Positions 3,346 to 38,531 of a stretch of DNA of 38,531 nt are shown one piece after another. The stretch's first letter is position 1; the number at the start of each line of letters is the position of its first letter. This DNA comes from Octopus sinensis. Its lineage: Eukaryota. Below the pieces are notes generated by a model. That model had not been told where the DNA came from. It saw nothing but the letters and a program-made list of their open reading frames with translations, and made no database searches. The stretch is from contig NW_021832815.1 in the NCBI RefSeq assembly GCF_006345805.1, forward strand, positions 1-38,531, in the 5' to 3' direction. The position numbers and the translations under genes are program-made.

Positions 3346-3389
<44 letters not shown>

Positions 3390-3861: not shown

Positions 3862-3894
<33 letters not shown>

Positions 3895-3917
3895 TTTATT
3901 CTATCCATGCTTGAGGA

Positions 3918-4107: not shown

Positions 4108-4190
<83 letters not shown>

Positions 4191-4347
4191 ACATATATAT
4201 ATACGACAGACCTCTTTCAGTTTCCGTCTACCAAATCCACTCACAAGGCACTGGTCAGCTTGAGGCTATAGTAGAAAACACTTGCTCAAGGCGCCACCCG
4301 GAACCATGTGGTTCGTAAACAAGCTACTTACCACACAGACACTCCTA
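3918..4347 (-). mobile_element. SINE family S1
   Basis: Reverse-complement copy with an (ACTCTTTT)n tail. Confidence 0.9.
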
Positions 4348-7029: not shown

Positions 7030-7394
7030 AGGCGCAGGAGTGGCTGTGTAGTAAGTAGCTTGTTTCTAAACCTCATGGTTCTGGGTTCAGTCCCATTGCA
7101 TAGCACCTTGGGCAAGTGTCTTCTTTTATAGCCTCGGGTCGACAAAAGCCTTGTGAGTGGATTTGGGAGACGGAAACTGAAAGAAGCCTGTCGTATATAA
7201 GTATATAGATATATGTGTGTGTGTGTGTTTGTCACCCTATACCCACCTGATAACCGGTGTTGGTTTGTTTACGTCCCCGCAAAAGAGACCGATAGAGTAA
7301 GTAAGTACCAAGCTTTAAAAAAATAAGTACTAGGGTCATTTATTCGACTAAAAATTCAGAATGGCCGCAGTCTAATGACTGAAACAGATGAAAG
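7030..7394 (+). mobile_element. SINE family S1 (diverged)
   Basis: Same head, core and tail as 3187-3600. Confidence 0.88.
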
Positions 7395-7536
7395 GTCAAA
7401 GCAAAAGATAAAAGATATTCATACATACATACGCTTACGTGCGCTTGTATGTGTGTGTAAGTACTGGAACGGTGTCGTATCTATGACCAGCATACTTAGC
7501 TTTCAAATATCTCACTTTACTCAAGTTAGGTTTTGT

Positions 7537-7837
7537 TTGTTCCTTCTCGAGCCATGCCTGGCTCATAAGGGCCGGTTTCCCGGTTTCTTGGCGTATAGGT
7601 TCCCCACCTGGACGGGACGCCGGTCCGTCGCAGGTGAGCTGCAAGATTCGGGAGAAAAGAGCGAGAGAAAGTTGTGGCGAAAGAGTCAGCAGAAGTTTCG
7701 CCATTACCTTCTGCCGGAGCCGCGTGGAGCTTAGGTGTTTTCGCTCATAAACACACACATCGCCCAGTCTCAGATTCGAACCCGCGATCCCTCGACCGCG
7801 AGTCCGCTGCTCTAACCACTAGGCCATGTGCCTCCAC
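7537..7837 (-). mobile_element. tRNA-derived SINE family S2, full length
   Basis: 20-bp TSD TTACTCAAGTTAGGTTTTGT (7517-7536 / 7838-7857); A box GGCCTAGTGGTTAGAGC and B box GGTTCGAATC on the minus strand. Confidence 0.93.
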
Positions 7838-8247
7838 TTACTCAAGTTAGGTTTTGTAAGTTTGACTGCTGAGGTAACTGCCTTCCGTAATCTTGAATTG
7901 CTTATGTATTGCCATTTACAACACGAACATCTTGAATGGTATGTCTAACACCCTACACAGTGTGATATGGATATTTGAAATTTGAATGCTTTTAGCGGAG
8001 TTTCTCCCTTTTTGAACGGAAGCATTGTCTGCAAGTCTTTCGTAATGTTATTAGTCATTAGATACTCAGTCCCGAGCAATCTCCGCAGCATCCCGAACCA
8101 AGGACAGCTAGCAAAGATTATGGATACTCTACCGCTTTCTACTCTTTCTCCTCTCTATTACTAACACATAGAAATGATGCAAAGCTTCACAGTAAACTTT
8201 CTTTACCAGTCTTGACTTCTTATTCAAACCCCACATTTAAAAGTTCG

Positions 8248-8675
8248 GGATCTTTTCGGTTTGAACGGCAGTTTTTTCTAGCGGTGTCATATGAAATCGT
8301 CACCCATAATTATGACCCTAATATCGATCTATTGCATTCCAATCTTTTTTAGGGTTAGGGTTAGGGTTAGGGTTAGGGGTGGGGAAAGGGTATCTTTTTT
8401 TCTTCAGAAATGTAAATAAACCCAATCTGTTTCTTAAACGAGAGACATATTCATACGGCACAGAATGCGTTTTACCTCAATAGACATATTTGATTGGTTT
8501 AAATTGCAGAAATTGCAGAAAAAGAACAACAAATATCTTACAAACTATAGAATTTTCTCAATAAAGCCAAGAGAAAAAGATGTTTTATAAACACATTCTA
8601 CCAGTATACGAAGTTCAAAATTTTTTAGTTACCTAGAGATTATGTTAAAAACTGCCGTTCAAACCGAAAAGATCC
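8248..8675. mobile_element. 428-bp MITE with 28-bp TIRs, 8-bp TSD and internal (TTAGGG)5
   Basis: TIRs GGATCTTTTCGGTTTGAACGGCAGTTTT / AAAACTGCCGTTCAAACCGAAAAGATCC; TSD AAAGTTCG at 8240-8247 and 8676-8683; telomeric hexamers at 8349-8378. GG termini with an 8-bp TSD suggest Merlin; hAT is not excluded. Confidence 0.88.
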
Positions 8676-9356: not shown

Positions 9357-10003
9357 TATTTATATAAAAAGAACGCGACGCTTTAGAGAAAACGCTGGCA
9401 ATTTTCTTGGCCTGTCTTGACCTTACATTCGAACCCCGAATTAAATAGGTTGCGTTCACAACAATCCAGCACGCGTTAAAATCTACACACCCGGAATAAC
9501 TACCGTCTACTTGACATTTCCCCTGGCCTCGAGAGATAACAATAAGAAAGAATATACATTTTTTTGTGACAATTTATCTTTCTTCTCTCTCTCTGGCTTT
9601 ATGACCGATCTCCTTGATTTGGGAAGAATTCTATATAAGGTAATCCTATTATCAACTAATGTTCCTTCTCCTATCTTGTTTTGTTTAATGCTATATAATG
9701 TAATATTGTTGCTATGGATCTCTGCTCTAAATGTAATAACAACTAGAACTTATCCGGATTATGAGGTCACGATGAACCAAGAAGTGTCAATAGATCTGCT
9801 CCAAACAAAATATAAAAGACGAATAAGTATATGAGTAATATCTTTACAAGTATCCTTTAAAATTGTATAACACAGGAGCGCGGTCGGAGTTTTATACTGT
9901 ACACATTCAATAAAAATTATATTCATCTCCTACGTATATAGATACACGTTCTAGCGCAGTACCCATAAAAAACGACGGTTAGTTTGATTGTGCAATACAT
10001 TCT

Positions 10004-10345
10004 GAGACCCTCTTCGGTCACGACACAGACCATGGGATTCCACCTAGAAAGTCACCCTCCGAGGTACAAGTCCGGGCAAGGTTGTTTATGGAAGACCAGC
10101 AGTCGCCCATGCATACCGGCCTCTTCTCTCCACGCCACCAGTGTTATCCAAGGGAAAGGCAAAGGAGCCGATACAGCTTGGCCCCTGTGACATCGCAACT
10201 CATTTCTACAGCTGAGTGAACTGGAGCAACGTGAAATAAAGTGTTTTTCTCAAGAACATGACACGCAGCGCGGTCCGGGATTCGAGCTCACAACCTCACG
10301 ATCGTAAGCTCGACGCTCTAATCACTGAGCCAGGCGCCTTCACTA
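10004..10345 (-). mobile_element. tRNA-derived SINE (family S3), full length
   Basis: Homologous to 2424-2751; TSD TGCAATACATT (9993-10003 / 10346-10356). Confidence 0.9.
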
Positions 10346-11231
10346 TGCAATACATTATGCAAACACAAATTACGCATAATCGCTTCTAAAGCAGTGGTGT
10401 ATCTAGTAAGCATTGGACTTCGAGAGAAAACCACCATGATAGTGAATAACCGAAAAGGAAAGGAATTTGAAGATTATTTTATCATGGATAGTAGACAGGC
10501 ATGAAGAAGAATGATTTAAAATGCGCTCACAGAAGAAACAATTACAGCAATACACACGAAATTTTTAGCTTTATACCCAGATAACGTATATACTGATAAT
10601 AATGGGTGCGTTTGAGGTAATTAATAAATGCATAAGTGACAATCTGAAATAAGCAACTAGCTAATACGCACATTACAAATACAATCCGTAAACAAGACAA
10701 TAAAAACACAGGAGACTGTTCTCAAATTCAGCATGGAACATTGTTTTCGATATCTACAATCCAGCAATGGAGCTTTGCATCTTTGTTAGAAACCAGCTCC
10801 TTCTTTACAGAGCGACTTTCATTGATAAATGACAGTAGAGGACACACGTACATACATTCGTACATCCAGATTTAGATATAAAAGATAAGAGGGGTTTTCG
10901 TCGGGGTGACTCAAATTAATGTGTATGTGCTCTAAGAGCTCAAATTGGTATGCTACTAAAATACCTGTTTGAACTGCAGTTGAAGATGTAATTTTGTGAC
11001 TGCCTTTTCTAAAGCGACTAGAAGTGGCTTCTCCTTGAGTCGGTAGGTATATGTTAAAGCAGATAAGATAAAGCAAACAGTTTTGCTAGACTTGACAAGG
11101 ACATTTAGTTTAGCTTTTATTGTATATCTAAATTAAATGTCTTTATCAAGTCATGCCGAACTGTTTGCTTTATCTTTTCTTCATTAATCTATACAGACAT
11201 AGATATATACATACACACGTACATACACGCA

Positions 11232-11536
11232 GTGGAGGCACATGGCCTAGTGGTTAGAGCAGCGGACTTGCGGTCGAGGGATCGTGTGTTCGAATCTCGG
11301 ACCGGGTGATGTGTGTGTTTATGAGCGAAAACACCTAAGCTCCACGCGGCCCCGGCAGAAGGTAATGGAAAACTTCTGCTGACTCTTTCGCCACAACTTT
11401 CTCTCACTCTTTCCTCCTGCATCTTGCAGCTCACCTGCGTCGGACAGGCATCCAGTCCAGGTGGGGAACCTATACGCCAAGATACCGGGAAACCGGCCCT
11501 TATGAGCCAGGCATGGCTCGAGAAGGAATAAAAAAC
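11232..11536 (+). mobile_element. SINE family S2, full length
   Basis: Homologous to 7537-7837. Confidence 0.9.
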
Positions 11537-15816: not shown

Positions 15817-15827
15817 AATGCAAATTA

Positions 15828-16070
15828 GTGGAGGCACATAGCCTAGTGGTTAAAGCAGCAGACTTGTGGTCGAGGGACCGCAGGTCCGAATCTCAGACCG
15901 GGCGATGTGTGTGTTTATGAGCGAAAAAGCCTAAGCTCCACGCGGTTCGGGCAGAAGGTAATGGCGAAACTTCTGCTGACTCTTTCGCCACAACTTTCTC
16001 TCACTCTTTCCTCCTGCAACTTGCAGCTCACCTGCGACGGACCGGCGTCCCGTCCAAGTGGGGAATCTAT
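15828..16070 (+). mobile_element. SINE family S2, 3'-truncated
   Basis: Homologous to S2 up to GTGGGGAA-CTATA. Confidence 0.88.
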
Positions 16071-16384
16071 ATATGTGGTGTGTGGTGTGTGTATTACGAT
16101 GTATTCGATGCTCTCCCAGTTTTGCCTTCGATTTAGGTCTATGGTATTTCATTAAGTTAAGCAGCAATGATGGCGTATAGATCTCATATCTTTTGCAACA
16201 CCCCGTTCCCTGATTGATGTGATTTGCCAGGCTAATGTCCAACAGAAACATGTACGTCAGCAGGTTAACAAGCTTGAGCAGAAGTGAGAACTGCACAGAG
16301 AGGTGTATGAACAGAATGCTTGCAAAAGAACGAAATATTCTAAATTTATCCAAAGAACAAATAGCGCAGCAAGACCGAAGGAGA

Positions 16385-16530
16385 GCATTGAATCACTTGG
16401 TTCAAGCAAAGGACGTATTGAACCACTTGGTTCAAGCAAAGGACGCATTGAATCACTTGGTTCAAGCAAAGGACGTATTGAACCACTTGGTTCAAGCAAA
16501 GGACGCATTGAATCACTAGGTTCAAGCAAA
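16385..16530. repeat. 30-bp minisatellite (~4.9 copies) with an internal 18-bp palindrome and A/B alternation
   Basis: Units (C/T)ATTGAA(T/C)CACTTGGTTCAAGCAAAGGACG; TTGAACCA-CT-TGGTTCAA is an inverted repeat; variants alternate A-B-A-B-A. Confidence 0.95.
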
Positions 16531-17153
16531 GCTCACGACTGGATAGAAAGTCCCTGACCTCAGCCTTCTAATCAATTGTAACAATTCTACAAAGAGCAAT
16601 AGTTAATTAAAATAGAGACTTACTTTCAATGCAGCATCATAGTAAGGACCTAGAGTTCCAGCGTTCACGGATTCAACCATAACTTTGGCACACCTGACGA
16701 ATACCGATAATTATTTTTTAGCTCTGAATGAGTAGATTTATGACTAAAACTATTCCAGCCTTGGCAATATACATATGTGTGTGTGTGTATGTATATATGT
16801 ATGAATATATGTATATATATATGCATATATGTATATATATATATATGCATATATGTATATATATGTACATATATATATATGTATATATATACATATATAT
16901 ATGTATACATATATATATGTATATATATGTATATATATATATGTATGTTATATATATATATATGTATATAATATATACATATATATATATGTTTAATATA
17001 TATATGTGTGTGTATTTATATTACTTATATATATGTTTATATAAATATATGCATTTATATACATATATATATATATACATACATATATATATACATATAA
17101 TATATACATATATATATATATATATGTATACATATATATATATATATATATAG

Positions 17154-18552: not shown

Positions 18553-18930
18553 CTACCAGTATCGCCCGGCGTTGCTCAGGTTTGTAAGGGAAATAACTAT
18601 AAAGCATTTTTAGAGAGTTATAGCCAAAAAATAGCAAAAAATGGAAAAAAATGATGGTAAATTTTTTTTGAGAGTTAAAAAAGGATGGAGTTGCGTCCCC
18701 TAGACAGTTTGTGGTTCGTGTTTCTGATTCTCGACCCCATGTCGAACTTATCGATTTTTTTCAGAACTGGGGAAACTTTTCAAAATTTTGGCTGCGTTAG
18801 TTTTGAATTATGACATTGGGCTATGTGTGTGTCAAGTTTCATCAGAATCGGTGAAAGCCGTGGTCAGGGTGAGGGTACAAGCAAACAGACACACAGAAAC
18901 ACGCACAGACAAACTGCCGTTTATATTATA
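18553..18930 (-). mobile_element. Helitron/Helentron-like non-autonomous element sharing its 3' module with 8960-9356
   Basis: 18553-18665 is the reverse complement of 9240-9356 (GCAACGCCGGGCGATACTG, GGGAAATAACTAT, AAATGATGGTAA). The other end has an AAGTTTCATCAGAATCGG...ACAGAC...TTTATAT module. Confidence 0.65.
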
Positions 18931-19103
18931 TATATATATATATAATAATATATATATATATATATAAGATAAAATCTTTATAAGAATGTATCATGTAGTT
19001 AGCGTGAAAAACCTCATAAGAGAAAAATCCACCAAATTTTCTCTTTAATATATTTATTTATATTATATAGAGGGCATTTATGTATAGTAATGCCCTCTAT
19101 ATA

Positions 19104-19147
<44 letters not shown>

Positions 19148-19839: not shown

Positions 19840-20513
19840 TGTGTGTGTATGTATGTATATTCATACATATATATACATATATATAATTTGTATGTTAACT
19901 TTATAACTGAATACGTATGTGTGTGTGTGTGCGTTGTGTGAGTATGTGCATGTATGTATGTATGTATCTATGTATGTATGCATACGTATGAATGTATGTA
20001 TGCATGCATGTATGTATGCGTATGGATGTATATATATATGTATACATGTATGTTTGTATCCGAAACACATTTAACTATATCAACATCCAGCTAGGTTTGA
20101 AAGCCATTCCGACAGTATATACTGTCTTGTTCCAGTACCTGCTGAGACATCCGTCTTTAACTCTACTAAACATCCTGGTTGCACACTGAGAAAATTGAAC
20201 TCTAAATTGTCAATTAATTAATGGTTATTCTTAGATTGAACAGAGGCAACTCAATTATCCTTGCGAAAAAAATGTTTGCCTATGTCAATATCACGAACAG
20301 ATACTCATACACACGGTCGCACAAACATATATACATTTGCACAAACACATGCATGTAGACACACACACATATATATATGTGTGTGTTTATATATATATAT
20401 ATATAGAAATATGTACTTACATACAAGTCGACGCTATATATATTATATGTAGAAAAATACATATATTATTATATGTAGAAAAAAGAATATATATATATAT
20501 ATGTGTATATATG

Positions 20514-20572
<59 letters not shown>

Positions 20573-20573
20573 G

Positions 20574-20640
<67 letters not shown>

Positions 20641-20788
20641 ATTTATATATAGAGGGCATAATTATACATACATGCCAGGAGGCATTATATATACTTGCCA
20701 AACGCTAAGAGGGACAATCAGTCATTTCTACCAAAATATTACTAATCCCACCGAATGCAATTTTTCAAAGTAAGACATTTAAAAATAT

Positions 20789-20839
20789 AGGCCTGTATCA
20801 CAGTGATTTCATACTACTTACGTAATCATCAGCAGGCCT
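20789..20839 (-). ncRNA. Type I hammerhead ribozyme, variant A copy (second, more corrupted copy at 21270-21320)
   Basis: Same core. Stem I is AGGCCTG/CAGGCCT (G-C where variant B has G-U), with a 3-nt GTA insertion in stem II/loop II in this copy. Confidence 0.75.
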
Positions 20840-21469
20840 GAATGTATTATAAATAAACACGACCCTGCCTCGCTTAAGCCGAACAGCTAACTGATCAACA
20901 TCAACGAAACACATGGGTGAGTTTATATATATTACATCCGGGTGAATGGCAAACTTTTACAAAATTGCATTTCGGGAGAGGAAGTTTTTTTTCGGAATAA
21001 AAATTTTTGCAATTAAGGACAACTACTTAATAAGGAAAACTAACAAGAAATTGTCAGGTAGATAGCGTAAAAACCTCATAAGAGAAAAAATTTCGAAAAT
21101 AATTATTTCTTATTGAACATATTAATTATATATAGAGGGCATAATTATACTACATGCCAGAGGCATTATATATACTTGCCAAACGCTAAGAGGGACAATC
21201 AGTCATTTCTACCAAAATATTACTAATCCCACCGAATGCAATTTTTCAAAGTAAGACATTTAAAAATATAGGCCTGTATCACAGTGATTTCATACTTACG
21301 TATCATCAGCAGCCAGGCCTGATATTATAAATAACAACGACCCTATAAATTAATATGTTCAATAAGAAATAATTATTTTCGAATTTTTTCTCTTATGAGG
21401 TTTTTACGCTATCTACCTGACAATTTCTTGTTAAGTTTTCCTTATTATAGTTGTCCTTAATTGCAAAAT

Positions 21470-21500
<31 letters not shown>

Positions 21501-21817
21501 AATATATATTAATATATATATGTATATATGTATATATATATGTATATATATATAGCAATTAAGGACAACTACTTAATAAGGAAAACTTAACAAGAAATTG
21601 TCAGGTAGATAGCGTAAAAACCTCATAAGAGAAAAAATTTCGAAAATAATTATTTCTTATTGAACATATTAATTTATATATAGAGGGCATTATACATACA
21701 TGCCGGAGGCATTCTACATACACGCCATACGCTAAGAGGGACAATCAGTCATTTCCTACCAAAATATTACTAATCCCCCGAATGCAATTTTTCAAAGAAA
21801 GACATTTAAAAATATAT

Positions 21818-21865
21818 AGACCTGTATCACAGTGATTTCATACTTACGTAATCATCAGCAGGCCT
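21818..21865 (-). ncRNA. Type I hammerhead ribozyme, minus-arm copy of variant B (also 22296-22343, 22773-22820)
   Basis: Exact reverse complement of the plus-arm 48-nt motif. Confidence 0.85.
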
Positions 21866-24722
21866 GAATATACCATAGATAAACAACGACCCCGCTTCGT
21901 TTAAGCCGATCAGCTAACTGATCAACATCAACGAAGCACGTGGTTGAATTTATATATACTATATCCGATGAATGGCAAACTTTTACGAATTGCATTTCGG
22001 GAGAGGAAAAGTTTTTTCGGAATAAAAATTTAGCAATTAAGGACAACTACTTAATAAGGAAAACTTAACAAGAAATTGTCAGGTAGATAGCGTAAAAACC
22101 TCATAAGAGAAAAAATTTCGAAAATAATATTCTTATTGAACATATTAATTTATATATAGAGGGCATTATACATACATGCCAGGAGGCATTCTACATACAC
22201 GCCATACGCTAAGAGGGACAATCAGTCATTTCTACCAAAAATATTACTAATCCCACCGAATGCAATTTTTCAAAGAAAGACATTTAAAAATATATAGACC
22301 TGTATCACAGTGATTTCATACTTACGTAATCATCAGCAGGCCTGAATATACCATAGATAAACAACGACCCCCGCTTCGTTAAGTAAGCCGATCAGCTACT
22401 GATCACATCAACGAAGCACATGGTTAATTTATATATACTATATCCGGATGAATGGCAAACTTTTACGAATTGCATTTCGGGAGAGGAAAAGTTTTTTCGG
22501 AATAAAATTTAGCAATTAAGGACAACTACTTAATAAGGAAACTTAACAAGAATTGTCAGGTAGATAGCGTAAAAACCTCATAAGAGAAAAAATTTCGAAA
22601 ATAATTATTTCTTATTGAACATATTAATTTATATATAGAGGGCATTATACATACATGCCAGGAGGCATTCTACATACACCCATACGCTAAGAGGGACAAT
22701 CAGTCATTTCTACCAAAAATATTACTAATCCCACCGAATGCAATTTTTCAAAGAAAGACATTTAAAATATATAGACCTGTATCACAGTGATTTCATACTT
22801 ACGTAATCATCAGCAGGCCTGAATATACCATAGATAAACAACGACCCCGCTTCGTTTAAGCCGATCAGCTAACTGATCAACATCAACGAAGCACATGGTT
22901 GAATTTATATATACTATATCCGGATGAATGGCAAACTTTTACGAATTGCATTTCGGGAGAGGAAAAGTTTTTTCGGAATAAAAATTTAGCAATTAAGGAC
23001 AACTACTTAATAAGGAAAACTTAACAAGAATTGTCAGGTAGATAGCGTAAAACCTCATAAGAGAAAATTTCGAAAATAATTATTTCTTATTGAACATATT
23101 AATTTATATATAGAGGGCATTATACATACATGCCAGGAGGCATTCTACATACCGCCATACGCTAAGAGGGACAATCAGTCATTTCTACCAAAAATTTACT
23201 AATCCCACCGAATGCAATTTTTCAAAGAAAGACATTTAAAAGACATTTAGCTGATCGCTTAAACGAAGCGGTCGTTGTTTATCTATGGTATATTCAGGCT
23301 GCTGATGATTACGTAAGTATGAAATCACTGTGATACAGGTCTATATTTTTAAATGTCTTTCTTTGAAAAATTGCATTCGGTGGGATTAGTAATATTTTTG
23401 GTAGAATGACTGATTGTCCCTCTTAGCGTATGGCGTGTATGTAGAATGCCTCCTGGCATGTATGTATAATGCCCTCTATATATAAATTAATATGTTCAAT
23501 AAGAATAATTATTTTCGAAATTTTTTCTCTTATGAGGTTTTACGCTATCTACCTGACAATTTCTTGTTAAGTTTTCCTTATTAAGTAGTTGTCCTTAATT
23601 GCTAAATTTTTATTCCGAAAAAACTTTTCCTCTCCCGAAATGCAATTCGTAAAGTTTGCCATTCATCCGGATATAGTATATATAAATTCAACCATGTGCT
23701 TCGTTGATGTTGATCAGTTAGCTGATCGGCTTAAACGAAGCGGGGTCGTTGTTTATCTATGGTATATTCAGGCCTGCTGATGATTACGTAAGTATGAAAT
23801 CACTGTGATACAGGTCTATATTTTTAAATGTCTTTCTTTGAAAAATTGCATTCGTGGGATTAGTAATATTTTTGGTAGAAATGACTGATTGTCCCTCTTA
23901 GCGTATGGCGTGTATGTAGAATGCCTCCTGGCATGTATGTATATGCCCTCTATATATAAATTAATATGTTCAATAAGAAATAATTATTTTCGAAATTTTT
24001 TCTCTTATGAGGTTTTTACGCTATCTACCTGACAATTTGTTAAGTTTTCCTTATTAAGTAGTTGTCCTTAATTGCTAAATTTTATTCCGAAAAAACTTTT
24101 CCTCTCCCGAAATGCAATTCGTAAAAGTTTGCCATTCATCCGGATATATATATATAAATTCAACCATGTGCTTCGTTGATGTTGATCAGTTAGCTGATCG
24201 GCTTAAACGAAGCGGGGTCGTTGTTTTATCTATGGTATATTCAGGCCTGCTGATGATTACGTAAGTATGAAATCACTGTGATACAGGTCTATATATTTTT
24301 AAATGTCTTTCTTTGAAAAATTGCATTCGGTGGGATTAGTAATATTTTTGGTAGAAATGACTGATTGTCCCTCTTAGCGTATGGCGTGTATGTAGAATGC
24401 CTCCTGGCATGTATGTATAATGCCCTCTATATATAAATTAATATGTTCAATAAGAAATAATTATTTTCGAAATTTTTTCTCTTATGAGGTTTTTACGCTA
24501 TCTACCTGACAATTTCTTGTTAAGTTTTCCTTATTAAGTAGTTGTCCTAATTGCTAAATTTTTATTCCGAAAAAACTTTTCCTCTCCCGAAATGCAATTC
24601 GTAAAAGTTTGCCATTCATCCGGATATAGTATATATAAATTCAACCATGTGCTTCGTTGATGTTGATCAGTTAGCTGATCGGCTTAAACGAAGCGGGGTC
24701 GTTGTTTATCTATGGTATATTC

Positions 24723-24770
24723 AGGCCTGCTGATGATTACGTAAGTATGAAATCACTGTGATACAGGTCT
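24723..24770 (+). ncRNA. Type I hammerhead ribozyme, representative plus-arm copy (12 copies, starting ~23294, 23770, 24243, 24723, 25202, 25683, 26160, 26635, 27117, 27596, 28075, 28555)
   Basis: AGGCCTG-CTGATGA-T-TAC-GTAA-GTA-T-GAAA-TCA-CTG-TGA-TA-CAGGTCT. Stem I AGGCCTG/CAGGTCT is 7 bp with one G-U; core CUGAUGA...GAAA; stem II is capped by a GNRA loop (GUAA); stem III is AUCA/UGAU; predicted cleavage after AUA (24763). A few copies have single-base indels that may be read errors. Confidence 0.85.
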
Positions 24771-27700
24771 ATATATTTTTAAATGTCTTTCTTTGAAAAA
24801 TTGCATTCGGTGGGATTAGTAATATTTTTGGTAGAAATGACTGATTGTCCCTCTTAGCGTATGGCGTGTATGTAGAATGCCTCCTGGCATGTATGTATAA
24901 TGCCCTCTATATATAATTATATGTTCAATAAGAAATAATTATTTTCGAAATTTTTTCTCTTATGAGGTTTTTACGCTATCTACCTGACAATTTCTTGTTA
25001 AGTTTTCCTTATTAAGTAGTTGTCCTTAATTGCTAAATTTTTATTCCGAAAAAACTTTTCCTCTCCCGAAATGCAATTCGTAAAAGTTTGCCATTCATCC
25101 GGATATAGTATATATAAATTCAACCATGTGCTTCGTTGATGTTGATCAGTTAGCTGATCGGCTTAAACGAAGCGGGGTCGTTGTTTATCTATGGTATATT
25201 CAGGCCTGCTGATGATTACGTAAGTATGAATCACTGTGATACAGGTCTATATATTTTTAAATGTCTTTCTTTGAAAAATTGCATTCGGTGGATTGATTAG
25301 TAATATTTTTTGTAGAAATGACTGATTGTCCCTCTTAGCGTATGGCGTGTATGTAGAATGCCTCCTGGCATGTATGTATAATGCCCTCTATATATAAATT
25401 AATATGTTCAATAAGAAATAATTATTTTCGAAATTTTTTCTCTTATGAGGTTTTTACGCTATCTACCTGACAATTTCTTGTTAAGTTTTCCTTATTAAGT
25501 AGTTGTCCTTAATTGCTAAATTTTTATTCCGAAAAAACTTTTCCTCTCCCGAAATGCAATTCGTAAAAGTTTGCCATTCCCGGATATAGTATATATAAAT
25601 TCAACCATGTGCTTCGTTGATGTTGATCAGTTAGCTGATCGGCTTAAACGAAGCGGGGTCGTTGTTTATCTATGGTATATTCAGGCCTGCTGATGATTAC
25701 GTAAGTATGAAATCACTGTGATACAGGTCTATATATTTTTAAATGTCTTTCTTTGAAAAATTGCATTCGGTGGGATTAGTAATATTTTTGGTAGAAATGA
25801 CTGATTGTCCCTCTTAGCGTATGGCGTGTATGTAGAATGCCTCCTGGCATGTATGTAAATGCCCTCTATATATAAATTAATATGTTCAATAAGAATAATT
25901 ATTTTCGAAATTTTTTCTCTTATGAGGTTTTTACGCTATCTACCTGACAATTTCTTGTTAAGTTTTCCTTATTAAGTAGTTGTCCTTAATTGCTAAATTT
26001 TTATTCCGAAAAACTTTTCCTCTCCCGAAATGCAATTCGTAAAAGTTTGCCATTCATCCGGATATAGTATATATAAATTCAACCATGTGCTTCGTTGATG
26101 TTGATCAGTTAGCTGATCGGCTTAAACGAAGCGGGTCGTTGTTTATCTATGGTATATTCAGGCCTGCTGATGATACGTAAGTATGAAATCACTGTGATAC
26201 AGGTCTATATATTTTTAAATGTCTTTCTTTGAAAAATTGCATTCGGTGGGATTAGTAATATTTTTGGTAGAAATGACTGATTGTCCCTCTTAGCGTATGG
26301 CGTGTATGTAGAATGCCTCCTGGCATGTATGTATAATGCCCTCTATATATAAATTAATATTCAATAAGAAATAATTATTTTCGAAATTTTTTCTCTATGA
26401 GGTTTTTACGCTATCTACCTGACAATTTCTTGTTAAGTTTTCCTTATTAAGTAGTTGTCCTTAATTGCTAAATTTTTATTCCGAAAAACTTTTCCTCTCC
26501 CGAAATGCAATTCGTAAAAGTTTGCCATTCATCCGGATATAGTATATATAAATTCAACCATGTGCTTCGTTGATGTTGATCAGTTAGCTGATCGGCTTAA
26601 ACGAAGCGGGGTCGTTGTTTATCTATGGTATATCAGGCCTGCTGATGATTACGTAAGTATGAAATCACTGTGATACAGGTCTATATATTTTTAAATGTCT
26701 TTCTTTCTTTGAAAAATTGCATTCGGGGGATTAGTAATATTTTTGGTAGAAATGACTGATTGTCCCTCTTAGCGTATGGCGTGTATGTAGAATGCCTCCT
26801 GGCATGTATGTATAATGCCCTCTATATATAAATTAATATGTTCAATAAGAAATAATTATTTTCGAAATTTTTTCTCTTATGAGGTTTTTACGCTATCTAC
26901 CTGACAATTTCTTGTTAAGCTTTCCTTATTAAGTAGTTGTCCTTAATTGCTAAATTTTATTCCGAAAAAACTTTCCTCTCCCGAAATGCAATTCGTAAAA
27001 GTTTGCCATTCATCCGGATATAGTATATATAATTCAACACCATGTGCTTCGTTGATGTTGATCAGTTAGCTGATCGGCTTAAACGAAGCGGGGTCGTTTT
27101 TATCTATGGTATATTCAGGCCTGCTGATGATTACGTAAGTATGAAATCACTGTGATACAGGTCTATATATTTTTAAATGTCTTTCTTTGAAAAATTGCAT
27201 TCGGTGGGATTAGTAATATTTTTGGTAGAAATGACTGATTGTCCCTCTTAGCGTATGGCGTGTATGTAGAATGCCTCCTGGCATGTATGTATAATGCCCT
27301 CTATATATAAATTAATATGTTCAATAAGAAATAATTATTTTCGAAATTTTTTCTCTTATGAGGTTTTTACGCTATCTACCTGACAATTTCTTGTAAGTTT
27401 TCCTTATTAAGTAGTTGTCCTTAATTGCTAAATTTTTATTCCGAAAAAACTTTTCCTCTCCCGAAATGCAATTCGTAAAAGTTTGCCATTCATCCGGATA
27501 TAGTAATATAAATTCAACCATGTGCTTCGTTGATGTTGATCAGTTAGCTGATCGGCTTAAACGAAGCGGGGTCGTTTTTTATCTATGGTATATTCAGGCC
27601 TGCTGATGATTACGTAAGTATGAAATCACTGTGATACAGGTCTATATATTTTTAAATGTCTTTCTTTGAAAAATTGCATTCGGTGGGATTAGTAATATTT

Positions 27701-28885
27701 TTGGTAGAAATGACTGATTGTCCCTCTTAGCGTATGGCGTGTATGTAGAATGCCTCCTGGCATGTATGTATAATGCCCTCTATATATAAATTAATATGTT
27801 CAATAAGAAATAATTATTTTCGAAATTTTTTCTCTTATGAGGTTTTTACGCTATCTACCTGACAATTTCTTGTTAAGTTTTCCTTATTAAGTAGTTGTCC
27901 TTAATTGCTAAATTTTTATTCCGAAAAACTTTTCCTCTCCCGAAATGCAATTCGTAAAAGTTTGCCATTCATCCGGATATAGTATATATAAATTCAACCA
28001 TGTGCTTCGTTGATGTTGATCAGTTAGCTGATCGGCTTAAACGAAGCGGGGTCGTTGTTTTCTATGGTATATTCAGGCCTGCTGATGATTACGTAAGTAT
28101 GAAATCACTGTGATACAGGTCTATATATTTTTAAATGTCTTTCTTTAAAAATTGCATTCGGTGGGATTAGTAATATTTTTGGTAGAAATGACTGATTGTC
28201 CCTCTTAGCGTATGGCGTGTATGTAGAATGCCTCCTGGCATGTATGTATAATAATGCCCTCTATATATAAATTAATATGTTCAATAAGAAATAATTATTT
28301 TCGAAATTTTTTCTCTTATGAGGTTTTTACGCTATCTACCTGACAATTTCTTGTTAAGTTTTCCTTATTAAGTAGTTGTCCTTAATTGCTAAATTTTTAT
28401 TCCGAAAAAACTTTTCCTCCCCGAAATGCAATTCGTAAATTTGCCATTCATCCGGATATAGTATATATAAATTCAACCATGTGCTTCGTTGATGTTGATC
28501 AGTTAGCTGATCGGCTTAAACGAAGCGGGGTCGTTGTTTATCTATGGTATATTCAGGCCTGCTGATGATTACGTAAGTATGAAATCACTGTGATACAGGT
28601 CTATATATTTTTTAAATGTCTTTCTTTGAAAATTGCATTCGGTGGGATTAGTAATATTTTTGGTAGAAATGACTGATTGTCCCTCTTAGCGTATGGCGTG
28701 TATGTAGAATGCCTCCTGGCATGTATGTATAATGCCCTCTATATATAAATGTATATATATATATATATATATTATATATAATATATATAATATAATGTAT
28801 GTATATTATATAATATATATATATATATATATGTATGTTATATATATATATGTATATATGTATATATATATATTTTATATATATT

Positions 28886-29026
28886 AAGGCGGCGAGCTGG
28901 CAGAAACGTTAGCACGCCGGGTGAAATGCGTAGCCGTATTCGTCTGCCGTTATGTTCTGAGTTCAAATTCCACCGAGGTCAACTTTGCCTTTCATCCTTT
29001 CTGGGTCGATAAATTAAGTACCAGTT
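28886..29026 (+). mobile_element. 5' half of S4 SINE, near-identical duplicate of 29225-29368
   Basis: Same sequence including the preceding TATTTTATATATATT flank. Confidence 0.85.
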
Positions 29027-29033
29027 ATGTGTA

Positions 29034-29137
<104 letters not shown>

Positions 29138-29143
29138 TATGTA

Positions 29144-29188
<45 letters not shown>

Positions 29189-29224
29189 ATGTATATATGT
29201 ATATATCTATTTTATATATATATT

Positions 29225-29464
29225 AAGGCGGCGAGCTGGCAGAAACGTTAGCACGCCGGGTGAAATGCGTAGCGGTATTTCGTCTGCCGTTATGTTTCGA
29301 GTTCAAATCCACCGAGGTCAACTTTGCCTTTCATCCTCTTCTGGGTCGATAAACATTAAGTACCAGTTCTTACCCACTGGGGTCGATGTAATCGACTTAA
29401 TACCTATGTCTGTCCTTGTTTGTCCCCTCTGTGTTTAGCCCCTTGTGGGTAATAAAGAAATAGG
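29225..29464 (+). mobile_element. SINE family S4
   Basis: AAGGCGGCGAGCTGGCAGAAACGTTAGC head, GAGTTCAAAT-C box, GGGTCGATAAA-TTAAGTACCAGT core, AGCCCCTTGTGGGTAATAAAGAAA tail. Confidence 0.85.
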
Positions 29465-31267: not shown

Positions 31268-31563
31268 GTGGAGACGCAATGGCCCAGTGGTTAGGGCAGC
31301 GGACGCGCGGTCGTAGGATCGCGGTTTCCATTCACAGACTGGGCGTTGTGAGTGTTTATTGAGCAAAAACACCTAAAGCTCACGAGGCTCCGACAGGGGG
31401 AAGGGCATCCCTGCTGTACTCTTTCGCAACAACTTTCTTTCACTTTTCTTTTGGCCTGCTCGCTTAGCCAACGGGGTGGCGTCATTTGAAGGCTAAAACA
31501 ATGCGAAGTGCATTGTCACCAGCGATGTGTAGCAACATCTGATAGCCTGGTCGGTCACGGTGA
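31268..31563 (+). mobile_element. SINE with S2 head and a different 3' tail
   Basis: S2-like to ...ACAACTTTCTTTCACT, then an unrelated tail ending GATAGCCTGGTCGGTCACGGTGATA. Confidence 0.8.
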
Positions 31564-32806: not shown

Positions 32807-33230
32807 ATGAGTGAGTGAGTGAATGAGTGAGTGAGTGAGTGAGTGAGCAAGGGAGGGAGGGAGGGAGAGAGTGAGTGAGTGAGGGAGGGAGTGAATGATT
32901 GAGTGCGTGAGTGAAAGACTGAGTGAGTGAATGAGTGAGCGAGGGAGGGAGGGAGGGAGAGGTTAAGTGAGGGGGGAGGGAGAGAGAGAGAGAGTAAGTG
33001 AGGGAAGAAGGGAGGGAGTGAATAATTGAGTGCGTGAGTGAGTGAGTGAGTGAGTGAGTGAGAGTGTGTGAGTGAGTGAGTGTGTGTGAGTGAGTGAGTG
33101 AGTGAGGGAAGGAGGGAGGAGGGAGGGAGTGAGTGAGTGAGTGAGTGAGTGAGTGAGTGAGTGAGTGAGTGAGTGTGCGAGTGAGTGAGGGAGGGAGGGA
33201 GGGAGGGGAGGGGGAGGGAGGGAGGGAGTG
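32807..33230. repeat. Compound purine-rich (GAGT)n/(GAGG)n microsatellite
   Basis: Direct reading of the sequence. Confidence 0.95.
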
Positions 33231-34719: not shown

Positions 34720-35446
34720 GATACATTGTCATCTGCTGGTATTGATACATCGATTAAAAGGCTGCTTTTTTCTTGTGATCTCTGACGACTACATCAAGTC
34801 TATTAGCCTTGATTTCTCTATCTGTATGTGTTGGCATAATCCAGAGTATGACTGCGCTGTCATTTTCTGATGCTTTTACTGGAGTGTGCCAATACCATCT
34901 TTTTTTCTGTTGTCATTCTATAGTGTTGGCATAGCTTTTGGTGTATATAGGTCCCAACTCTGTCATGTCTATGGATATATTCCTTCTTAGCCAGAACTGA
35001 TTAGCCAGAGAGAATATGATTCATTGTTTATCCCCATCATCCCATATTCTGCAATTACTTGTATTTATATAGTTATGGTTTTCATTGTGTGTTTCTGGTG
35101 ATTTCTGGTGGGGAGGCTTTGATCTTGTGCTGCAGTTAAAAAATCCTTCAGTCTCTGCTTTGAGTCCTGAACTTCTCAGTCTTTGTTTATATTTTACTTT
35201 GTTTATTTCTTTTCTACTCTTTTACTTGTTTCAGTCATTTGACTGTGGCCATGCTGGAGCACCGCCTTTAGTCGAGCAAATCGACCCCCAGGACTTATTC
35301 TTTGTAAGCCTAGTACTTATTCTATCGGTCTCTTTTGCCGAACCGCTAAGTTACGGGGTCGTAAACACACCAGCATCGGTTGTCAAGTGATGTTGGGGGT
35401 GGGGGGACAAACACACACGCATAAACATATACACACACACATGCAT

Positions 35447-35479
<33 letters not shown>

Positions 35480-36765
35480 CGACGGGCTTCTTTCAGTTTC
35501 CGTCTACCAGATCCACTCAAAAGGCTTTGGTCGACCCGAGGCTATAGTAGAAGACACTTGCCCAATGTGCCACGCAGTGGGACCGAACCCGGAACTATAT
35601 GATTGGTAAACAAGCAACTTACCACACAGCCACTCCTAGCTTAACTCAATATATGCCATGTAGAGGCTTTTCTTGCCATCGTTTTATCATAATTTGTTGT
35701 TCCAATTTTGGCTTGGATTTCAGTTGTTTTACAATTTTTGTTGTTTCTTCCTTATCTTCATAGTAATCAGGTTTCTTGTATTTTTCAGCTTCTTTAATGA
35801 TAGAAAGCAGTTTTTTTTTTTGTTTTCCTCGTGTTTTGTGATTATTTGTATCGGTTTTCCTTGCTTCAGAGTTAGGTATTTCTAAAATCTTATAGTGATT
35901 GTTTTATAATAAAGTCTGCCATTATTTTTCTTGTTTTCCTGTCTAGTTTGATTAGTTCATTTAGAATCCAATTAAGAATATTGGTGCTGTAACTTATAAC
36001 TGGAACAGCTAGGATATTGATACCTATTATCTTATTTTTTGCATTAAGCTCTTTCTCAGTACTAATCTTATTCGTCTATAGTATTCCTTTCTTATCTTCT
36101 CTTTCATTGTGTGTGATGTACCGTATCTAGTTCATTGATTCCTAAGTATTTGTATGTCTGGCTTTGGTCTAATTCTCTTATTTCATTAGCTTTATCTAGT
36201 GTGATATTGTTACCCTTAACTAGTTTTCCTTTTTTAAGGTTGCTTTGGCACAATTTTCTAAACCGAATTTCATGTTTATTTCTTTGATAAATCGATGCAC
36301 TGTCCATAGTAATATTTCCAGCTGTTTGTGATTTGTAACATACAGTTTTAGATCATCCATAAATAAGAGATGGTTGATTGTTTTACCGTAACAGTTGTAT
36401 TCACATCTAGTTCTGTTTAGTATGTCAGTTAAAGACGTCAGTGCCAACCAGAAAAGGAGTGGAGAGAAAGTGTCTCCCTGGAATAGTCCTCTCCTAATGG
36501 GGATGGAGCTGCGGCACTGTTTGCCATTTATTCATGGAATGTTTTACATGTATTTTATTATTATCCATGGCTAACTTATCCATGGCTAGTCAAAAGTTTA
36601 CCGTGAAAAACCCTTTGATAATCGACCCCAGCCATACTTAGACCTTTCTTAGACTGTCTTCAGTTATGGCATTATTGATCAATAACTGGTCGTTACAACC
36701 ATATGAGCCCTTGCCGCATCTCTTCTGCTCTTCTGGAAACAAGTTGGCTTCATCCAGATGTTTTC
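34720..36765 (-). mobile_element. Decayed R4/Dong-type (RLE clade) non-LTR retrotransposon: RT, zinc knuckle and restriction-like endonuclease; interrupted by a SINE at 35186-35638
   Basis: Minus-strand translation across stops and frameshifts gives HLDEANLFPEEQKRCGKGSYGCNDQLLINNAI, PIRRGLFQGDTFSPLLF, INHLLFMDDLKLY (FMDD at ~36352-36363), MKFGLENCAK, QTYKYLGINE, KRWQEKPLHG, SGLKAETEG..AAQDQSLPTRNH, HRHDRVGTYIH, ILWIMPTHTDREIKANRLDVVVRD and LLIDVSIPADDNVS. Confidence 0.92.
35186..35638 (-). mobile_element. SINE family S1 inserted in the R4/Dong LINE
   Basis: Reverse-complement S1 copy; LINE protein motifs resume on both sides. Confidence 0.9.
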
Positions 36766-38263: not shown

Positions 38264-38531
38264 GTGAAGGCGCGTGGATTAGTCGTTAGGGGCATTCGGT
38301 TCATGATCGTAAGGTCGTGAGTTCAATTCCCGGCGGCGCGTTGTGTCCTTGAGCAAGACATTTTATTTCACGTTGCTTCAGTCCACTCAGCTGGCAAAAA
38401 TGAGTTGTATCAGTATTTCAAAGGGCCATCCTTGTCACACTCTGTGTCACGCTGAATCTCCCCGAGAACTACGTTAAAGGCACACGTGTCTGTGGAGTGC
38501 TCAGCCACTTGCACGTTAATTTCACGAGCAA
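38264..38531 (+). mobile_element. tRNA-derived SINE with S3 head and core but a different body; runs off the window end
   Basis: GAAGGCGCGTGG...GAGTTCAATTCCCGG head and GTTGTGTCCTTGAGCAAGACATTTTATTTCACGTTGC core shared with S3; downstream sequence is unrelated to S3. Confidence 0.8.

What the first reader, a model, noticed from the sequence alone, without database searches (positions are those of the whole stretch)
20640..28750. Retrozyme-like array: ~17 tandem 480-bp monomers, each full monomer carrying a type I hammerhead ribozyme
Seen: a head-to-tail ~480-bp repeat with one complete HHR fold per full monomer (7-bp stem I, CUGAUGA, stem II with GUAA loop, GAAA, stem III, AUA site) and no consistent ORF. 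Established: tandem satellites with type I HHRs (newt satellite 2, schistosome SMalpha, metazoan non-LTR retrozymes) are transcribed as multimers, self-cleave to monomers and can accumulate as circular RNAs. Inference: this is an active or recently active retrozyme family, probably cephalopod, with a monomer at or above the size range I recall for animal retrozymes (~170-400 nt). I do not know of a description in octopus but cannot confirm novelty without a search.
Basis: partly seen in the sequence, partly recalled or inferred. Interest (0 to 1): 0.92.

Follow-up and report, generated by a model that had tools for sequence, protein, structure and literature searches.

The report
Hammerhead-ribozyme tandem repeat (animal retrozyme-like)
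An 8-kb block of about 17 copies of a non-coding 481-bp repeat, each with a hammerhead self-cleaving RNA motif, looks like an ordinary new member of the animal "retrozyme" repeats already known from corals, mussels and salamanders; its copies sit in two head-to-head inverted pairs inside (TA)n microsatellites, not in one head-to-tail array.

Summary
The repeat is real. It is not one head-to-tail array: 12 motifs lie on the + strand and 5 on the - strand, in four blocks that form two head-to-head pairs. All four HHR-sense 3' ends abut (TA)n.

A lenient HHR descriptor accepts 13 of the 17 copies and found nothing in 60 Mb of random sequence. Rfam does not call it: no hit at gathering score, and only 12.8 bits to Hammerhead_HH9 on a 53-nt slice. 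Helix II is weak (a U.U mismatch plus 3 bp), which has a precedent in an axolotl retrozyme that still cleaves. The monomer RNA is strongly self-paired (z about -5.5).

Best reading: a non-LTR retrozyme-like family with two subfamilies 5.4% apart, inserted with the signature of Penelope-like elements. Catalysis, transcription, circular RNA and the cephalopod origin are all untested. The monomer size is not unusual, since published retrozyme consensuses span 51-972 bp. I rate it a new member of a known kind, of moderate interest.

The parts
20487..20651 (.). (TA)n microsatellite, left flank of the composite array
   Evidence: TRF; sequence
20634..21343 (-). Block 1, subfamily B, about 1.45 monomers in minus orientation. 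The HHR-sense 3' end (consensus position about 156-161) lies at 20634 against (TA)n; the 5' end (consensus 414) lies at 21343. HHR motifs have A17 at 20796 (fold intact, with a GUA insertion in loop 2) and 21277 (defective).
   Evidence: blastn of the consensus; pairwise alignment gives 26 substitutions (5.4%) against subfamily A; the two B copies are identical in substitutions
21344..21470 (+). Block 2, a plus-oriented fragment (consensus 149-278). It is joined head-to-head to block 1, and its 3' end runs into (TA)n.
21470..21554 (.). Internal (TA)n tract between the two head-to-head pairs
21544..23241 (-). Block 3, subfamily A, 3.5 monomers in minus orientation. The 3' end (consensus about 274-283) lies against the internal (TA)n; the 5' end is truncated at consensus 14. 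HHR A17 at 21825, 22303, 22780.
23244..28756 (+). Block 4, subfamily A, 11.5 monomers in plus orientation. The 5' end is truncated at consensus 386; the 3' end (consensus about 155-161) lies against (TA)n. HHR A17 at 23335, 23810, 24283, 24763, 25241, 25723, 26199, 26675, 27157, 27636, 28115, 28595.
24723..24770 (+). Reference HHR motif. Helix I 5' strand 24723-24729 (AGGCCUG); core CUGAUGA 24730-24736; helix II with GUAA loop 24737-24748 (U.U, then U-A, A-U, C-G); G12 A13 A14 at 24749-24751; helix III 24752-24762 (AUCA/UGAU with a CUG loop); A17 at 24763, with predicted cleavage on its 3' side; helix I 3' strand 24764-24770 (CAGGUCU).
   Evidence: sequence; descriptor; same register in the Rfam HH9 alignment; alignment of copies
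28757..28884 (.). (TA)n microsatellite, right flank
18972..19078 (-). Diverged solo fragment of the same family (about 77% identity to consensus 136-245, no HHR part), itself bracketed by (TA)n

Best explanation
The locus holds a non-autonomous, non-coding retroelement family of the metazoan non-LTR retrozyme kind: a 481-nt unit with one type I hammerhead ribozyme.

Proposed mechanism (inferred, not shown):
1. HHR-sense multimeric transcripts self-cleave after A17, at the 481|1 junction of the consensus. Because helix III is marginal as a hairpin (-0.2 kcal/mol) but stable as an inter-unit duplex (-12.1 kcal/mol), cleavage may work better in a dimeric HHR arrangement.
2. The 481-nt monomers are ligated by a host ligase into highly self-paired circular RNAs.
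3. A reverse transcriptase supplied in trans copies them back into DNA, most likely that of a Penelope-like element (PLE).

The locus itself looks like two separate insertion events from two subfamilies, A and B, 5.4% apart. Each event is a head-to-head pair: an inverted 5'-truncated block next to a direct tandem block. All four HHR-sense 3' ends fall in AU-rich tracts of the monomer (consensus about 156-161 or about 274-283) and abut (TA)n.

This is the published PLE insertion signature. It also fits internal priming on a circular or multimeric template, followed by rolling-circle reverse transcription, rather than priming at an HHR-cleaved 3' end.

Shown here: the repeat, the motif, its non-random nature, the block architecture, the absence of coding capacity, and the predicted self-pairing of the RNA. 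Inferred: cleavage, circularisation, the identity of the mobilising enzyme, and the priming mode.
For: - Tandem 478-479-bp repeat. Consensus of 481 nt with copies at 97.5-99.8% identity.
- 17 HHR motifs with an intact CUGAUGA/GAAA core, A15.1-U16.1 pair, AUA site and a 7-bp helix I. 13 of 17 pass a lenient descriptor that gives 0 hits in 60 Mb of random sequence and none elsewhere in the window.
- The Rfam HH9 model aligns the motif in the same register.
- The differences between subfamilies A and B inside the HHR are all compatible with the structure: G.U to G-C in helix I, a GUA insertion in loop 2, and loss of one TA unit beyond helix I. No core base changes.
- Monomer RNA MFE z = -5.3 (linear) and -5.7 (circular), 64% of bases paired.
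- No ORF of 45 aa or more on the HHR strand of the consensus. GC about 33%.
- Architecture: block 20634-21343(-) joined to 21344-21470(+), and block 21544-23241(-) joined to 23244-28756(+). The 5' ends are variable (consensus 414, 149, 14, 386). The 3' ends are recurrent and all lie against (TA)n, which covers only about 5% of the rest of the window.
- A-type copies in both orientations are substitution-identical. About 10 genuine substitutions occur over 13 copies against 66 indel columns.
- A third, diverged fragment at 18972-19078 is again bracketed by (TA)n.
- Literature: metazoan retrozyme features, and the axolotl HHR_Amex2 with a U.U at the base of helix II that still cleaves (PMC7229834). 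PLE insertions form partial tandems plus an adjacent inverted 5'-truncated copy, with a (TA)n target bias reported for the Naiad clade of PLEs (PMC8557442). Retrozymes are related to PLE pseudo-LTRs (bioRxiv 10.64898/2026.07.22.740005).
Against: - No Rfam hammerhead family reaches its gathering score. The only match is 12.8 bits against 52.
- Helix II has a U.U at 10.1-11.1 and only three A/U-rich pairs. The helix III hairpin is worth -0.2 kcal/mol. The HHR fold (-9.1) lies 3.6 kcal/mol above the local MFE (-12.7), and the local fold is not better than shuffles (z -0.38).
- No homologue from any other locus or species could be retrieved. There is therefore no covariation or purifying-selection test. 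A versus B is a single comparison, read after the fact.
- No transcript data are available.
- In the 2026 preprint, 8 of 9 predicted Xenopus retrozyme dimers did not cleave in vitro.
- No PLE ORF lies in the window. The only RT relic (36223-36531) is an unclassified RVT_1 fragment.
- The inverted architecture could be a DNA-level rearrangement at (TA)n, or in part an assembly problem in a noisy long-read region.
Confidence: 0.7

Rival explanations
1. The repeat is a plain satellite or minisatellite that descends from an HHR-bearing element, but its ribozyme is now dead. The weak helix II and marginal helix III abolish cleavage, the array grew by unequal crossing-over, and no circular RNA is made.
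For: - U.U at 10.1-11.1, a 3-bp helix II and a helix III hairpin of -0.2 kcal/mol.
- Rfam score far below threshold.
- 8 of 9 predicted Xenopus retrozyme dimers were inactive in vitro.
- Near-identity of the copies is also what unequal exchange or gene conversion produces.
Against: - All 11 core bases, the A15.1-U16.1 pair and the cleavage triplet are intact in both subfamilies 5.4% apart, and the changes between them keep the fold.
- An axolotl HHR with the same U.U defect cleaves, and cleaves better as a dimer.
- Unequal crossing-over does not explain two head-to-head pairs with recurrent 3' ends in (TA)n.
Confidence: 0.2
2. The inverted-block architecture is not an insertion signature. It comes from DNA-level events at hairpin-prone (TA)n tracts (fold-back inverted duplication, replication-fork switching), or from misassembly of noisy long reads. 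The element may still be a retrozyme; this rivals only the PLE-type integration step.
For: - (TA)n is palindromic and fragile.
- Sequence on the two sides of the internal (TA)n (21344-21470 against 21544 onward) forms an inverted repeat about 130 nt long.
- Copies differ by indels far more than by substitutions, which suggests an unpolished long-read region.
Against: - The 23241/23244 junction joins consensus 14 to consensus 386, so it is out of register. It is not the perfect palindrome that a fold-back read or a hairpin duplication would give.
- The two pairs belong to different subfamilies by their substitution markers.
- The pattern of variable inner ends and recurrent outer ends appears twice.
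Confidence: 0.25
3. The HHR-like motif is a chance resemblance inside an unrelated tandem repeat.
For: - Rfam does not recognise it at threshold.
- In a multi-gigabase genome a lenient descriptor is expected to produce a few chance matches; my analytic estimate is about 4e-9 per position.
Against: - 0 hits in 60 Mb of random sequence, so fewer than about 1e-4 are expected per monomer.
- The motif coincides with the other retrozyme features: tandem units, low GC, no ORF, self-paired RNA.
- It is preserved in a second subfamily.
Confidence: 0.03
4. The array is a stack of pseudo-LTRs or the 3' part of an autonomous Penelope-like element, rather than an independent non-autonomous family.
For: PLE pseudo-LTRs carry type I HHRs and occur as partial tandems with inverted copies. 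Xenopus retrozymes are sister to PLE pseudo-LTRs.
Against: - No RT or GIY-YIG ORF lies in or next to the array. The longest ORFs are 63 aa and inconsistent between copies.
- Roughly 15 pure monomers in a row are not a PLE body.
- According to PMC7229834, PLE HHRs are 'minimal' variants; here helix III has 4 bp.
Confidence: 0.05

Closest known systems
Metazoan non-LTR retrozymes (coral, mussel and axolotl families; Cervera & de la Pena 2020, PMC7229834)
   Same: Tandem units of a few hundred bp, each with one type I HHR. Low GC, no coding capacity, and a highly self-paired monomer RNA. A weak-helix HHR that may act as a dimer. The axolotl HHR_Amex2 shares the U.U mismatch at the base of helix II.
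   Different: No sequence similarity could be tested. The monomer (481 nt) is longer than the 170-400-nt circular RNAs described there, but lies within the 51-972-bp range of the 2026 preprint. This locus shows inverted head-to-head blocks and (TA)n junctions, neither of which is mentioned in that paper's main text. Expression and cleavage are untested here.
Classical HHR satellites: newt satellite 2, Schistosoma SM-alpha, Dolichopoda pDo500 (PMC2837043, PMC2808323)
   Same: Satellite-like tandem DNA whose transcript carries a type I HHR. pDo500 is a cave-cricket satellite family with an HHR; that its monomer is about 500 bp, comparable to this one, is from my own knowledge and from its name.
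   Different: A different sequence and host. Those families have documented transcripts and cleavage, and pDo500 has documented cross-species conservation; none of this is available here.
Penelope-like elements (PLEs) and their pseudo-LTR HHRs (PMC8557442; Cervera & de la Pena 2014)
   Same: The same insertion architecture: partial tandems plus an adjacent inverted 5'-truncated copy, inside (TA)n microsatellites. A type I HHR is present.
   Different: No RT or GIY-YIG ORF. The HHR has a 4-bp helix III rather than the minimal PLE variant. The unit is repeated about 15 times with no element body.
Plant LTR retrozymes (PMC4918200)
   Same: Non-autonomous, HHR-processed, with circular RNA intermediates (same logic).
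   Different: The plant elements have type III HHRs in LTRs, a PBS and PPT, high GC and a dimeric HHR arrangement, and are mobilised by Gypsy elements. None of these features applies here.

Membership tests
Hammerhead ribozyme, type I | Conserved core C3-U4-G5-A6-N7-G8-A9 and G12-A13-A14 | tested here: met
   CUGAUGA and GAAA are present in 16 of 17 copies; one copy reads GAA after a 1-nt deletion.
Hammerhead ribozyme, type I | Three helices around the core, with helix I open and helices II and III closed by loops (type I topology) | tested here: met
   Helix I has 7 bp. Helix II has 3 bp plus a U.U, capped by GUAA. Helix III has 4 bp with a CUG loop. The descriptor accepts 13 of 17 copies, and the Rfam HH9 alignment uses the same register.
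Hammerhead ribozyme, type I | A15.1-U16.1 pair and a non-G residue at position 17 (NUH cleavage triplet) | tested here: met
   A15.1 (24752) pairs with U16.1 (24762), and A17 is at 24763, giving the triplet AUA. These are invariant in all 12 aligned copies, which represent both subfamilies.
Hammerhead ribozyme, type I | Watson-Crick 10.1-11.1 pair (usually G-C) at the base of helix II | tested here: not met
   The pair is U.U (24737/24748). This pair is typical rather than absolute: axolotl HHR_Amex2 has the same U.U and cleaves 22% per hour as a monomer, and more efficiently as a dimer (PMC7229834).
Hammerhead ribozyme, type I | Score at or above the Rfam gathering threshold for a hammerhead covariance model (clan CL00010) | tested here: not met
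   No hit at the gathering score, nor at E<=10 on 9.5 kb or on 111 nt. Hammerhead_HH9 gives 12.8 bits against 52 on a 53-nt slice.
Hammerhead ribozyme, type I | Site-specific Mg2+-dependent self-cleavage | not testable with these tools
   This needs in vitro transcription of a monomer-plus or dimer, with a core mutant as control.
Metazoan non-LTR retrozyme | [quoted passage not shown] | tested here: met
   481-bp unit, about 16.7 units, 17 motifs. The units lie in both orientations.
Metazoan non-LTR retrozyme | Low GC (<45%) and no coding capacity | tested here: met
   GC is 0.32-0.33 across the array. The longest consensus ORF is 54 aa, on the non-HHR strand; there is none of 45 aa or more on the HHR strand.
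Metazoan non-LTR retrozyme | Highly self-paired monomer RNA | tested here: met
   MFE -126.6 kcal/mol (linear) and -119.9 (circular), z = -5.25 and -5.65 against dinucleotide shuffles. This is a prediction only.
Metazoan non-LTR retrozyme | Expressed as linear and circular monomer RNAs | not testable with these tools
   No transcriptome of the source organism is available.
Metazoan non-LTR retrozyme | Dispersed multi-locus family that co-exists with PLEs in the genome | tested here: inconclusive
   Two subfamilies and one diverged solo fragment lie within 10 kb. No other locus could be reached, and no PLE was identified in the window.
Penelope-like element (autonomous) | ORF encoding an RT and a GIY-YIG endonuclease | tested here: not met
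   There are no such ORFs in or beside the array.
Penelope-like element (autonomous) | Insertion as partial tandems with an adjacent inverted 5'-truncated copy; microsatellite (TA)n target | tested here: met
   Two head-to-head pairs, with all four 3' ends in (TA)n, compared with PMC8557442 section 6. This shows that the locus resembles a PLE-type insertion, not that it is a PLE.

The most novel reading that the evidence does not exclude
The locus preserves the junctions of two independent retrozyme integration events. Each has variable 5' truncation points joined head-to-head, and recurrent HHR-sense 3' ends inside AU-rich tracts of the monomer, fused to (TA)n. None of these ends is at the HHR cleavage site. 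If this holds genome-wide, it would be direct structural evidence that animal retrozymes are integrated by PLE-type target-primed reverse transcription, primed internally on a circular (or uncleaved multimeric) RNA and extended by rolling-circle copying. So far that step has been argued only from co-occurrence and from similarity to PLE pseudo-LTRs. It would also be the first retrozyme family described in its host lineage, if the host is a cephalopod.
Probability: 0.3. Interest if true: 0.55.

Novelty: new member of a known kind. Interest (0 to 1): 0.35.

Why it matters
HHR-bearing tandem repeats (retrozymes) are an abundant source of small circular RNAs in animals. How they are mobilised is still inferred rather than shown.

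This locus adds a further family with a weak-helix HHR variant. More usefully, it offers a clean example in which the insertion architecture can be read: head-to-head blocks, (TA)n junctions, and 3' ends away from the cleavage site. That architecture points to Penelope-like machinery and to a circular or multimeric template.

No paper in the searchable library links hammerhead ribozymes or retrozymes to cephalopods. If the host is an octopus, the family would extend the known distribution. That would not change the concept.

Tried and rejected
- Rfam at gathering score on the whole window, and at E<=10 on 9.5 kb and on 111 nt: no hammerhead. The many mir-297/mir-3149-type hits are (TA)n/(TG)n low-complexity artefacts.
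- C/D-box snoRNA reading (snoZ7, 14.3 bits against 43): rejected. The hit rests only on UGAUGA, there is no CUGA D box, and only 26 nt lie between the stem strands.
- Coding repeat: rejected. ORFs are 63 aa or shorter and shift frame between copies.
- tRNA-derived unit: ARAGORN finds nothing.
- Second ribozyme on the opposite strand or elsewhere in the monomer: none found by the descriptor or by Rfam.
- PLE-type minimal HHRs elsewhere in the window: only one very loose match at 37299, probably chance.
- Fold-back assembly artefact at 23241/23244: unlikely, because the two arms are out of register (consensus 14 against 386).
- Related loci elsewhere: exact-pattern scans of metagenome contigs (38-mer and 23-mer), viral contigs and prokaryotic genome contigs found nothing. 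No eukaryotic genome collection was available.
- Organism identification failed. A protein search with a repeat ORF found nothing. The RT fragment gave only unnamed ENA hits at 51-55% identity. Exact-protein look-ups were empty, and sequence strings were not found in papers.
- A cluster of 19 apparent substitutions in copy 22779-22303 was a misalignment caused by indels.

Full report
**Observation**

Tandem Repeats Finder reports a 478-479-bp repeat at 21553-23241 (3.5 copies, 96% matches) and 23247-28750 (11.5 copies, 97%). I cut the monomers at the predicted cleavage site and aligned them, which gave a 481-nt consensus. blastn of that consensus against the window places family sequence continuously from 20634 to 28756, apart from an internal (TA)n at 21470-21554. 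That is about 16.7 monomer equivalents.

In the reference copy it runs as follows:
- helix I 5' strand AGGCCUG, 24723-24729
- core CUGAUGA, 24730-24736
- helix II UUAC-GUAA-GUAU, 24737-24748
- G12 A13 A14, 24749-24751
- helix III AUCA-CUG-UGAU, 24752-24762
- A17 at 24763
- helix I 3' strand CAGGUCU, 24764-24770

The array is not head-to-tail. Twelve motifs are on the + strand (A17 at 23335 to 28595) and five are on the - strand (22780, 22303, 21825, 21277, 20796). The AT skew flips sign near 23000 accordingly.

In HHR-sense orientation the locus consists of four blocks:
- Block 1: 20634-21343 (-), running from consensus 414 at its inner end to consensus about 156-161 at its outer end.
- Block 2: 21344-21470 (+), consensus 149 to 278.
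- An internal (TA)n at 21470-21554.
- Block 3: 21544-23241 (-), 3.5 units, with consensus 14 at the inner end and about 274-283 at the (TA)n end.
- Block 4: 23244-28756 (+), 11.5 units, running from consensus 386 to about 155-161.

(TA)n tracts flank the whole structure, at 20487-20651 and from 28757 onward.

**Is the HHR motif more than chance?**

I wrote a deliberately lenient type I descriptor. It requires helix I of at least 5 bp; CUGANGA; helix II of at least 3 bp with a mismatch allowed at 10.1-11.1; GAAA; helix III of at least 3 bp including A15.1-U16.1; and a non-G residue at position 17.

It accepts 13 of the 17 copies. It finds nothing elsewhere in the window on either strand. It also finds nothing in 2 x 30 Mb of first-order Markov sequence modelled on the window background and on the monomer. 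The expectation per monomer is therefore below about 1e-4. The four failing copies each carry a small indel.

Rfam does not recognise the motif. There was no hit at gathering score, and none at E<=10 on 9.5 kb or on 111 nt. Only on a 53-nt slice did Hammerhead_HH9 (RF02275, a type I model) appear, at 12.8 bits against a gathering score of 52, E 0.49. Its alignment uses exactly the register I derived by hand and flags the first helix II pair as non-canonical. That hit shows the register is consistent; it is not independent support for the call.

**Weak points of the ribozyme**

- Positions 10.1-11.1 are U.U, and the rest of helix II is U-A, A-U, C-G under a GUAA tetraloop.
- The helix III hairpin is worth only -0.2 kcal/mol.
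- The full HHR secondary structure scores -9.1 kcal/mol, against a local MFE of -12.7. The local region folds no better than shuffles (z -0.38).
- Two helix III segments pair with each other at -12.1 kcal/mol. A dimeric HHR formed across neighbouring units is therefore plausible, as described for newt and axolotl repeats.

The literature gives a direct precedent. [quoted passage not shown] It still cleaves 22% in one hour as a monomer, and much better as a dimer (PMC7229834).

As a caution, a 2026 preprint found cleavage for only 1 of 9 predicted Xenopus retrozyme dimers (10.64898/2026.07.22.740005). I put the chance of detectable self-cleavage at roughly even. That is lower than my confidence that the element belongs to this class.

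**The monomer as a whole**

- The consensus has no ORF of 45 aa or more on the HHR strand and a maximum of 54 aa on the other strand. ORFs in the window copies are 63 aa or shorter and change frame between copies.
- GC is about 0.33.
- The monomer RNA is predicted to be strongly self-paired: -126.6 kcal/mol linear and -119.9 circular, z = -5.25 and -5.65 against dinucleotide shuffles, with 64% of bases paired. The complementary strand gives z -5.1 and -4.6.
- ARAGORN finds no tRNA-like part, and no other Rfam ribozyme family matches.

**Copies and subfamilies**

The 13 complete A-type monomers compared differ from the consensus by about 10 genuine substitutions and by 66 indel columns. A cluster of 19 apparent substitutions in one copy was an indel-driven misalignment. 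Indels outnumbering substitutions this heavily points to long-read noise or slippage on essentially identical copies. The minus-oriented and plus-oriented A blocks are the same sequence.

Block 1 belongs to a second subfamily, B, which differs from A by 26 substitutions (5.4%) plus indels. Its two copies share every one of these substitutions over their 150-nt overlap. B is therefore a different lineage, not simply an older, decayed copy.

Within the HHR, the A/B differences are:
- U to C at position 1.5, turning G.U into G-C;
- a GUA insertion that enlarges loop 2 and keeps all helix II pairs;
- loss of one TA unit just beyond helix I.

No core base differs. This fits structural constraint. 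It is, however, a single comparison read after the fact, and the count of changes in the HHR (2 substitutions in 54 nt) is not significantly below the monomer average.

A third, diverged fragment (about 77% identity, consensus 136-245) lies at 18972-19078. It too sits between (TA)n tracts.

**Architecture and mechanism**

Read in HHR sense, blocks 1+2 and blocks 3+4 are two head-to-head pairs.
- The inner ends are all different (consensus 414 | 149, and 14 | 386) and are joined directly.
- The four outer ends fall at only two monomer positions, about 156-161 and about 274-283. Both are AU-rich tracts (UAUAUAUAAAUUAAUAU and UAAAUUUUUAUU).
- Every outer end abuts (TA)n, which covers only about 5% of the rest of the window.

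Variable 5' ends with recurrent 3' ends are what target-primed reverse transcription leaves behind.

This layout is the documented structure of Penelope-like element insertions: an inverted 5'-truncated copy immediately upstream of direct partial tandems. (TA)n is a preferred target of the Naiad clade of PLEs (PMC8557442 section 6). PLEs are the proposed mobilisers of animal retrozymes (PMC7229834 discussion; the 2026 preprint).

None of the 3' ends lies at the HHR cleavage site. Priming therefore seems to have been internal, on a circular or uncleaved multimeric RNA. Rolling-circle copying of one circle would also explain why the roughly 15 A-type units are substitution-identical.

These steps are inference from one locus. 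DNA-level rearrangement at hairpin-prone (TA)n, or assembly error, remains a serious alternative for the architecture. One argument against it is that the out-of-register junction at 23241/23244 is not what a simple fold-back would produce.

**Comparison with known systems**

The element meets the sequence-level definition of a metazoan non-LTR retrozyme. It has tandem units of a few hundred bp, each with a type I HHR; low GC; no coding capacity; and a self-paired RNA (PMC7229834).

Its size is unremarkable. Published figures are 150-450 bp for HHR tandem repeats (PMC7229834) and 51-972 bp for retrozyme consensuses (the 2026 preprint). HHR-bearing satellites such as the cave-cricket pDo500 family (PMC2837043) are a further precedent; that pDo500 monomers are about 500 bp is my own recollection and the family's name, not something I read here.

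It is not an autonomous PLE, because it has no ORF. It is not a plant LTR retrozyme either, since those have a type III HHR, LTRs and high GC.

Expression, circularity, cleavage and co-occurrence with PLEs could not be tested. I could retrieve no homologue from any collection available, and I could not establish the host organism.

The window is clearly from a repeat-rich animal-type genome. It has dense microsatellites, a TTAGGG run, SINE-like dispersed repeats and an RVT_1 relic. No paper in the searchable library connects hammerheads or retrozymes with cephalopods.

**Verdict**

This is a genuine repeat family bearing an HHR motif, and a new member of a known kind. The claimed head-to-tail arrangement, the size argument and the implied novelty do not.

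The most interesting residue is the pair of head-to-head, (TA)n-embedded insertion structures. Together with a genome-wide survey, they could give junction-level evidence for how animal retrozymes integrate.

Noticed in passing
18972-19078 (- strand), flanked by (TA)n at 18922-18966 and 19098-19144: A diverged solo fragment (about 77% identity) of the same 481-bp family, covering consensus 136-245 and lacking the HHR part. It suggests older insertions of the family in the same TA-rich neighbourhood.
   Followed up: partly
20634-28756, all A-type copies: Copies differ from the consensus by 66 indel columns but only about 10 genuine substitutions. The region looks like unpolished long-read sequence, or is prone to slippage, so copy-specific HHR defects (23302, 25209, 26167) may be sequencing noise.
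   Followed up: partly
28740-29368: A unit of about 339 bp is present 1.8 times immediately 3' of the array. It consists of (TA)n plus the first roughly 125 nt of a SINE-like element (aaggcggcgagctggcagaaacgttagcacgcc...gttcaaattccaccgaggtcaac). ARAGORN calls no tRNA.
   Followed up: no
8349-8378: An interstitial run of five TTAGGG telomere-type repeats.
   Followed up: no
7533-7838, 11231-11535, 15827-16071, 31268-31447: A dispersed repeat of about 300 bp (78-93% identity between copies, both orientations), probably a SINE-like element.
   Followed up: no
3192-3614, 3918-4347, 7036-7394, 35215-35638; also 2417-2750, 9995-10343, 38264-38407: Two further dispersed repeat families (71-86% identity). 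The first forms an inverted pair at 3192-4347.
   Followed up: no
36223-36531 (- strand): A frameshifted reverse-transcriptase relic (Pfam RVT_1, E 4.9e-10, with an FMDD motif). Its closest database proteins are unnamed ENA fragments at 51-55% identity. Its clade (LINE or PLE) was not determined.
   Followed up: partly
16385-16531: A 30-bp minisatellite (4.9 copies, 92%; it reads as a 60-bp unit at 98%).
   Followed up: no
32808-33205: A long (TGAG)n microsatellite of about 100 copies, which creates a spurious 194-aa ORF on the minus strand.
   Followed up: no
481-nt consensus (reference copy 24764-25241): The HHR strand has five runs of T5-T6 per monomer, and the other strand has two. RNA polymerase III would be expected to terminate within each unit, so multimeric precursors probably need another polymerase. 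This is inference only.
   Followed up: no
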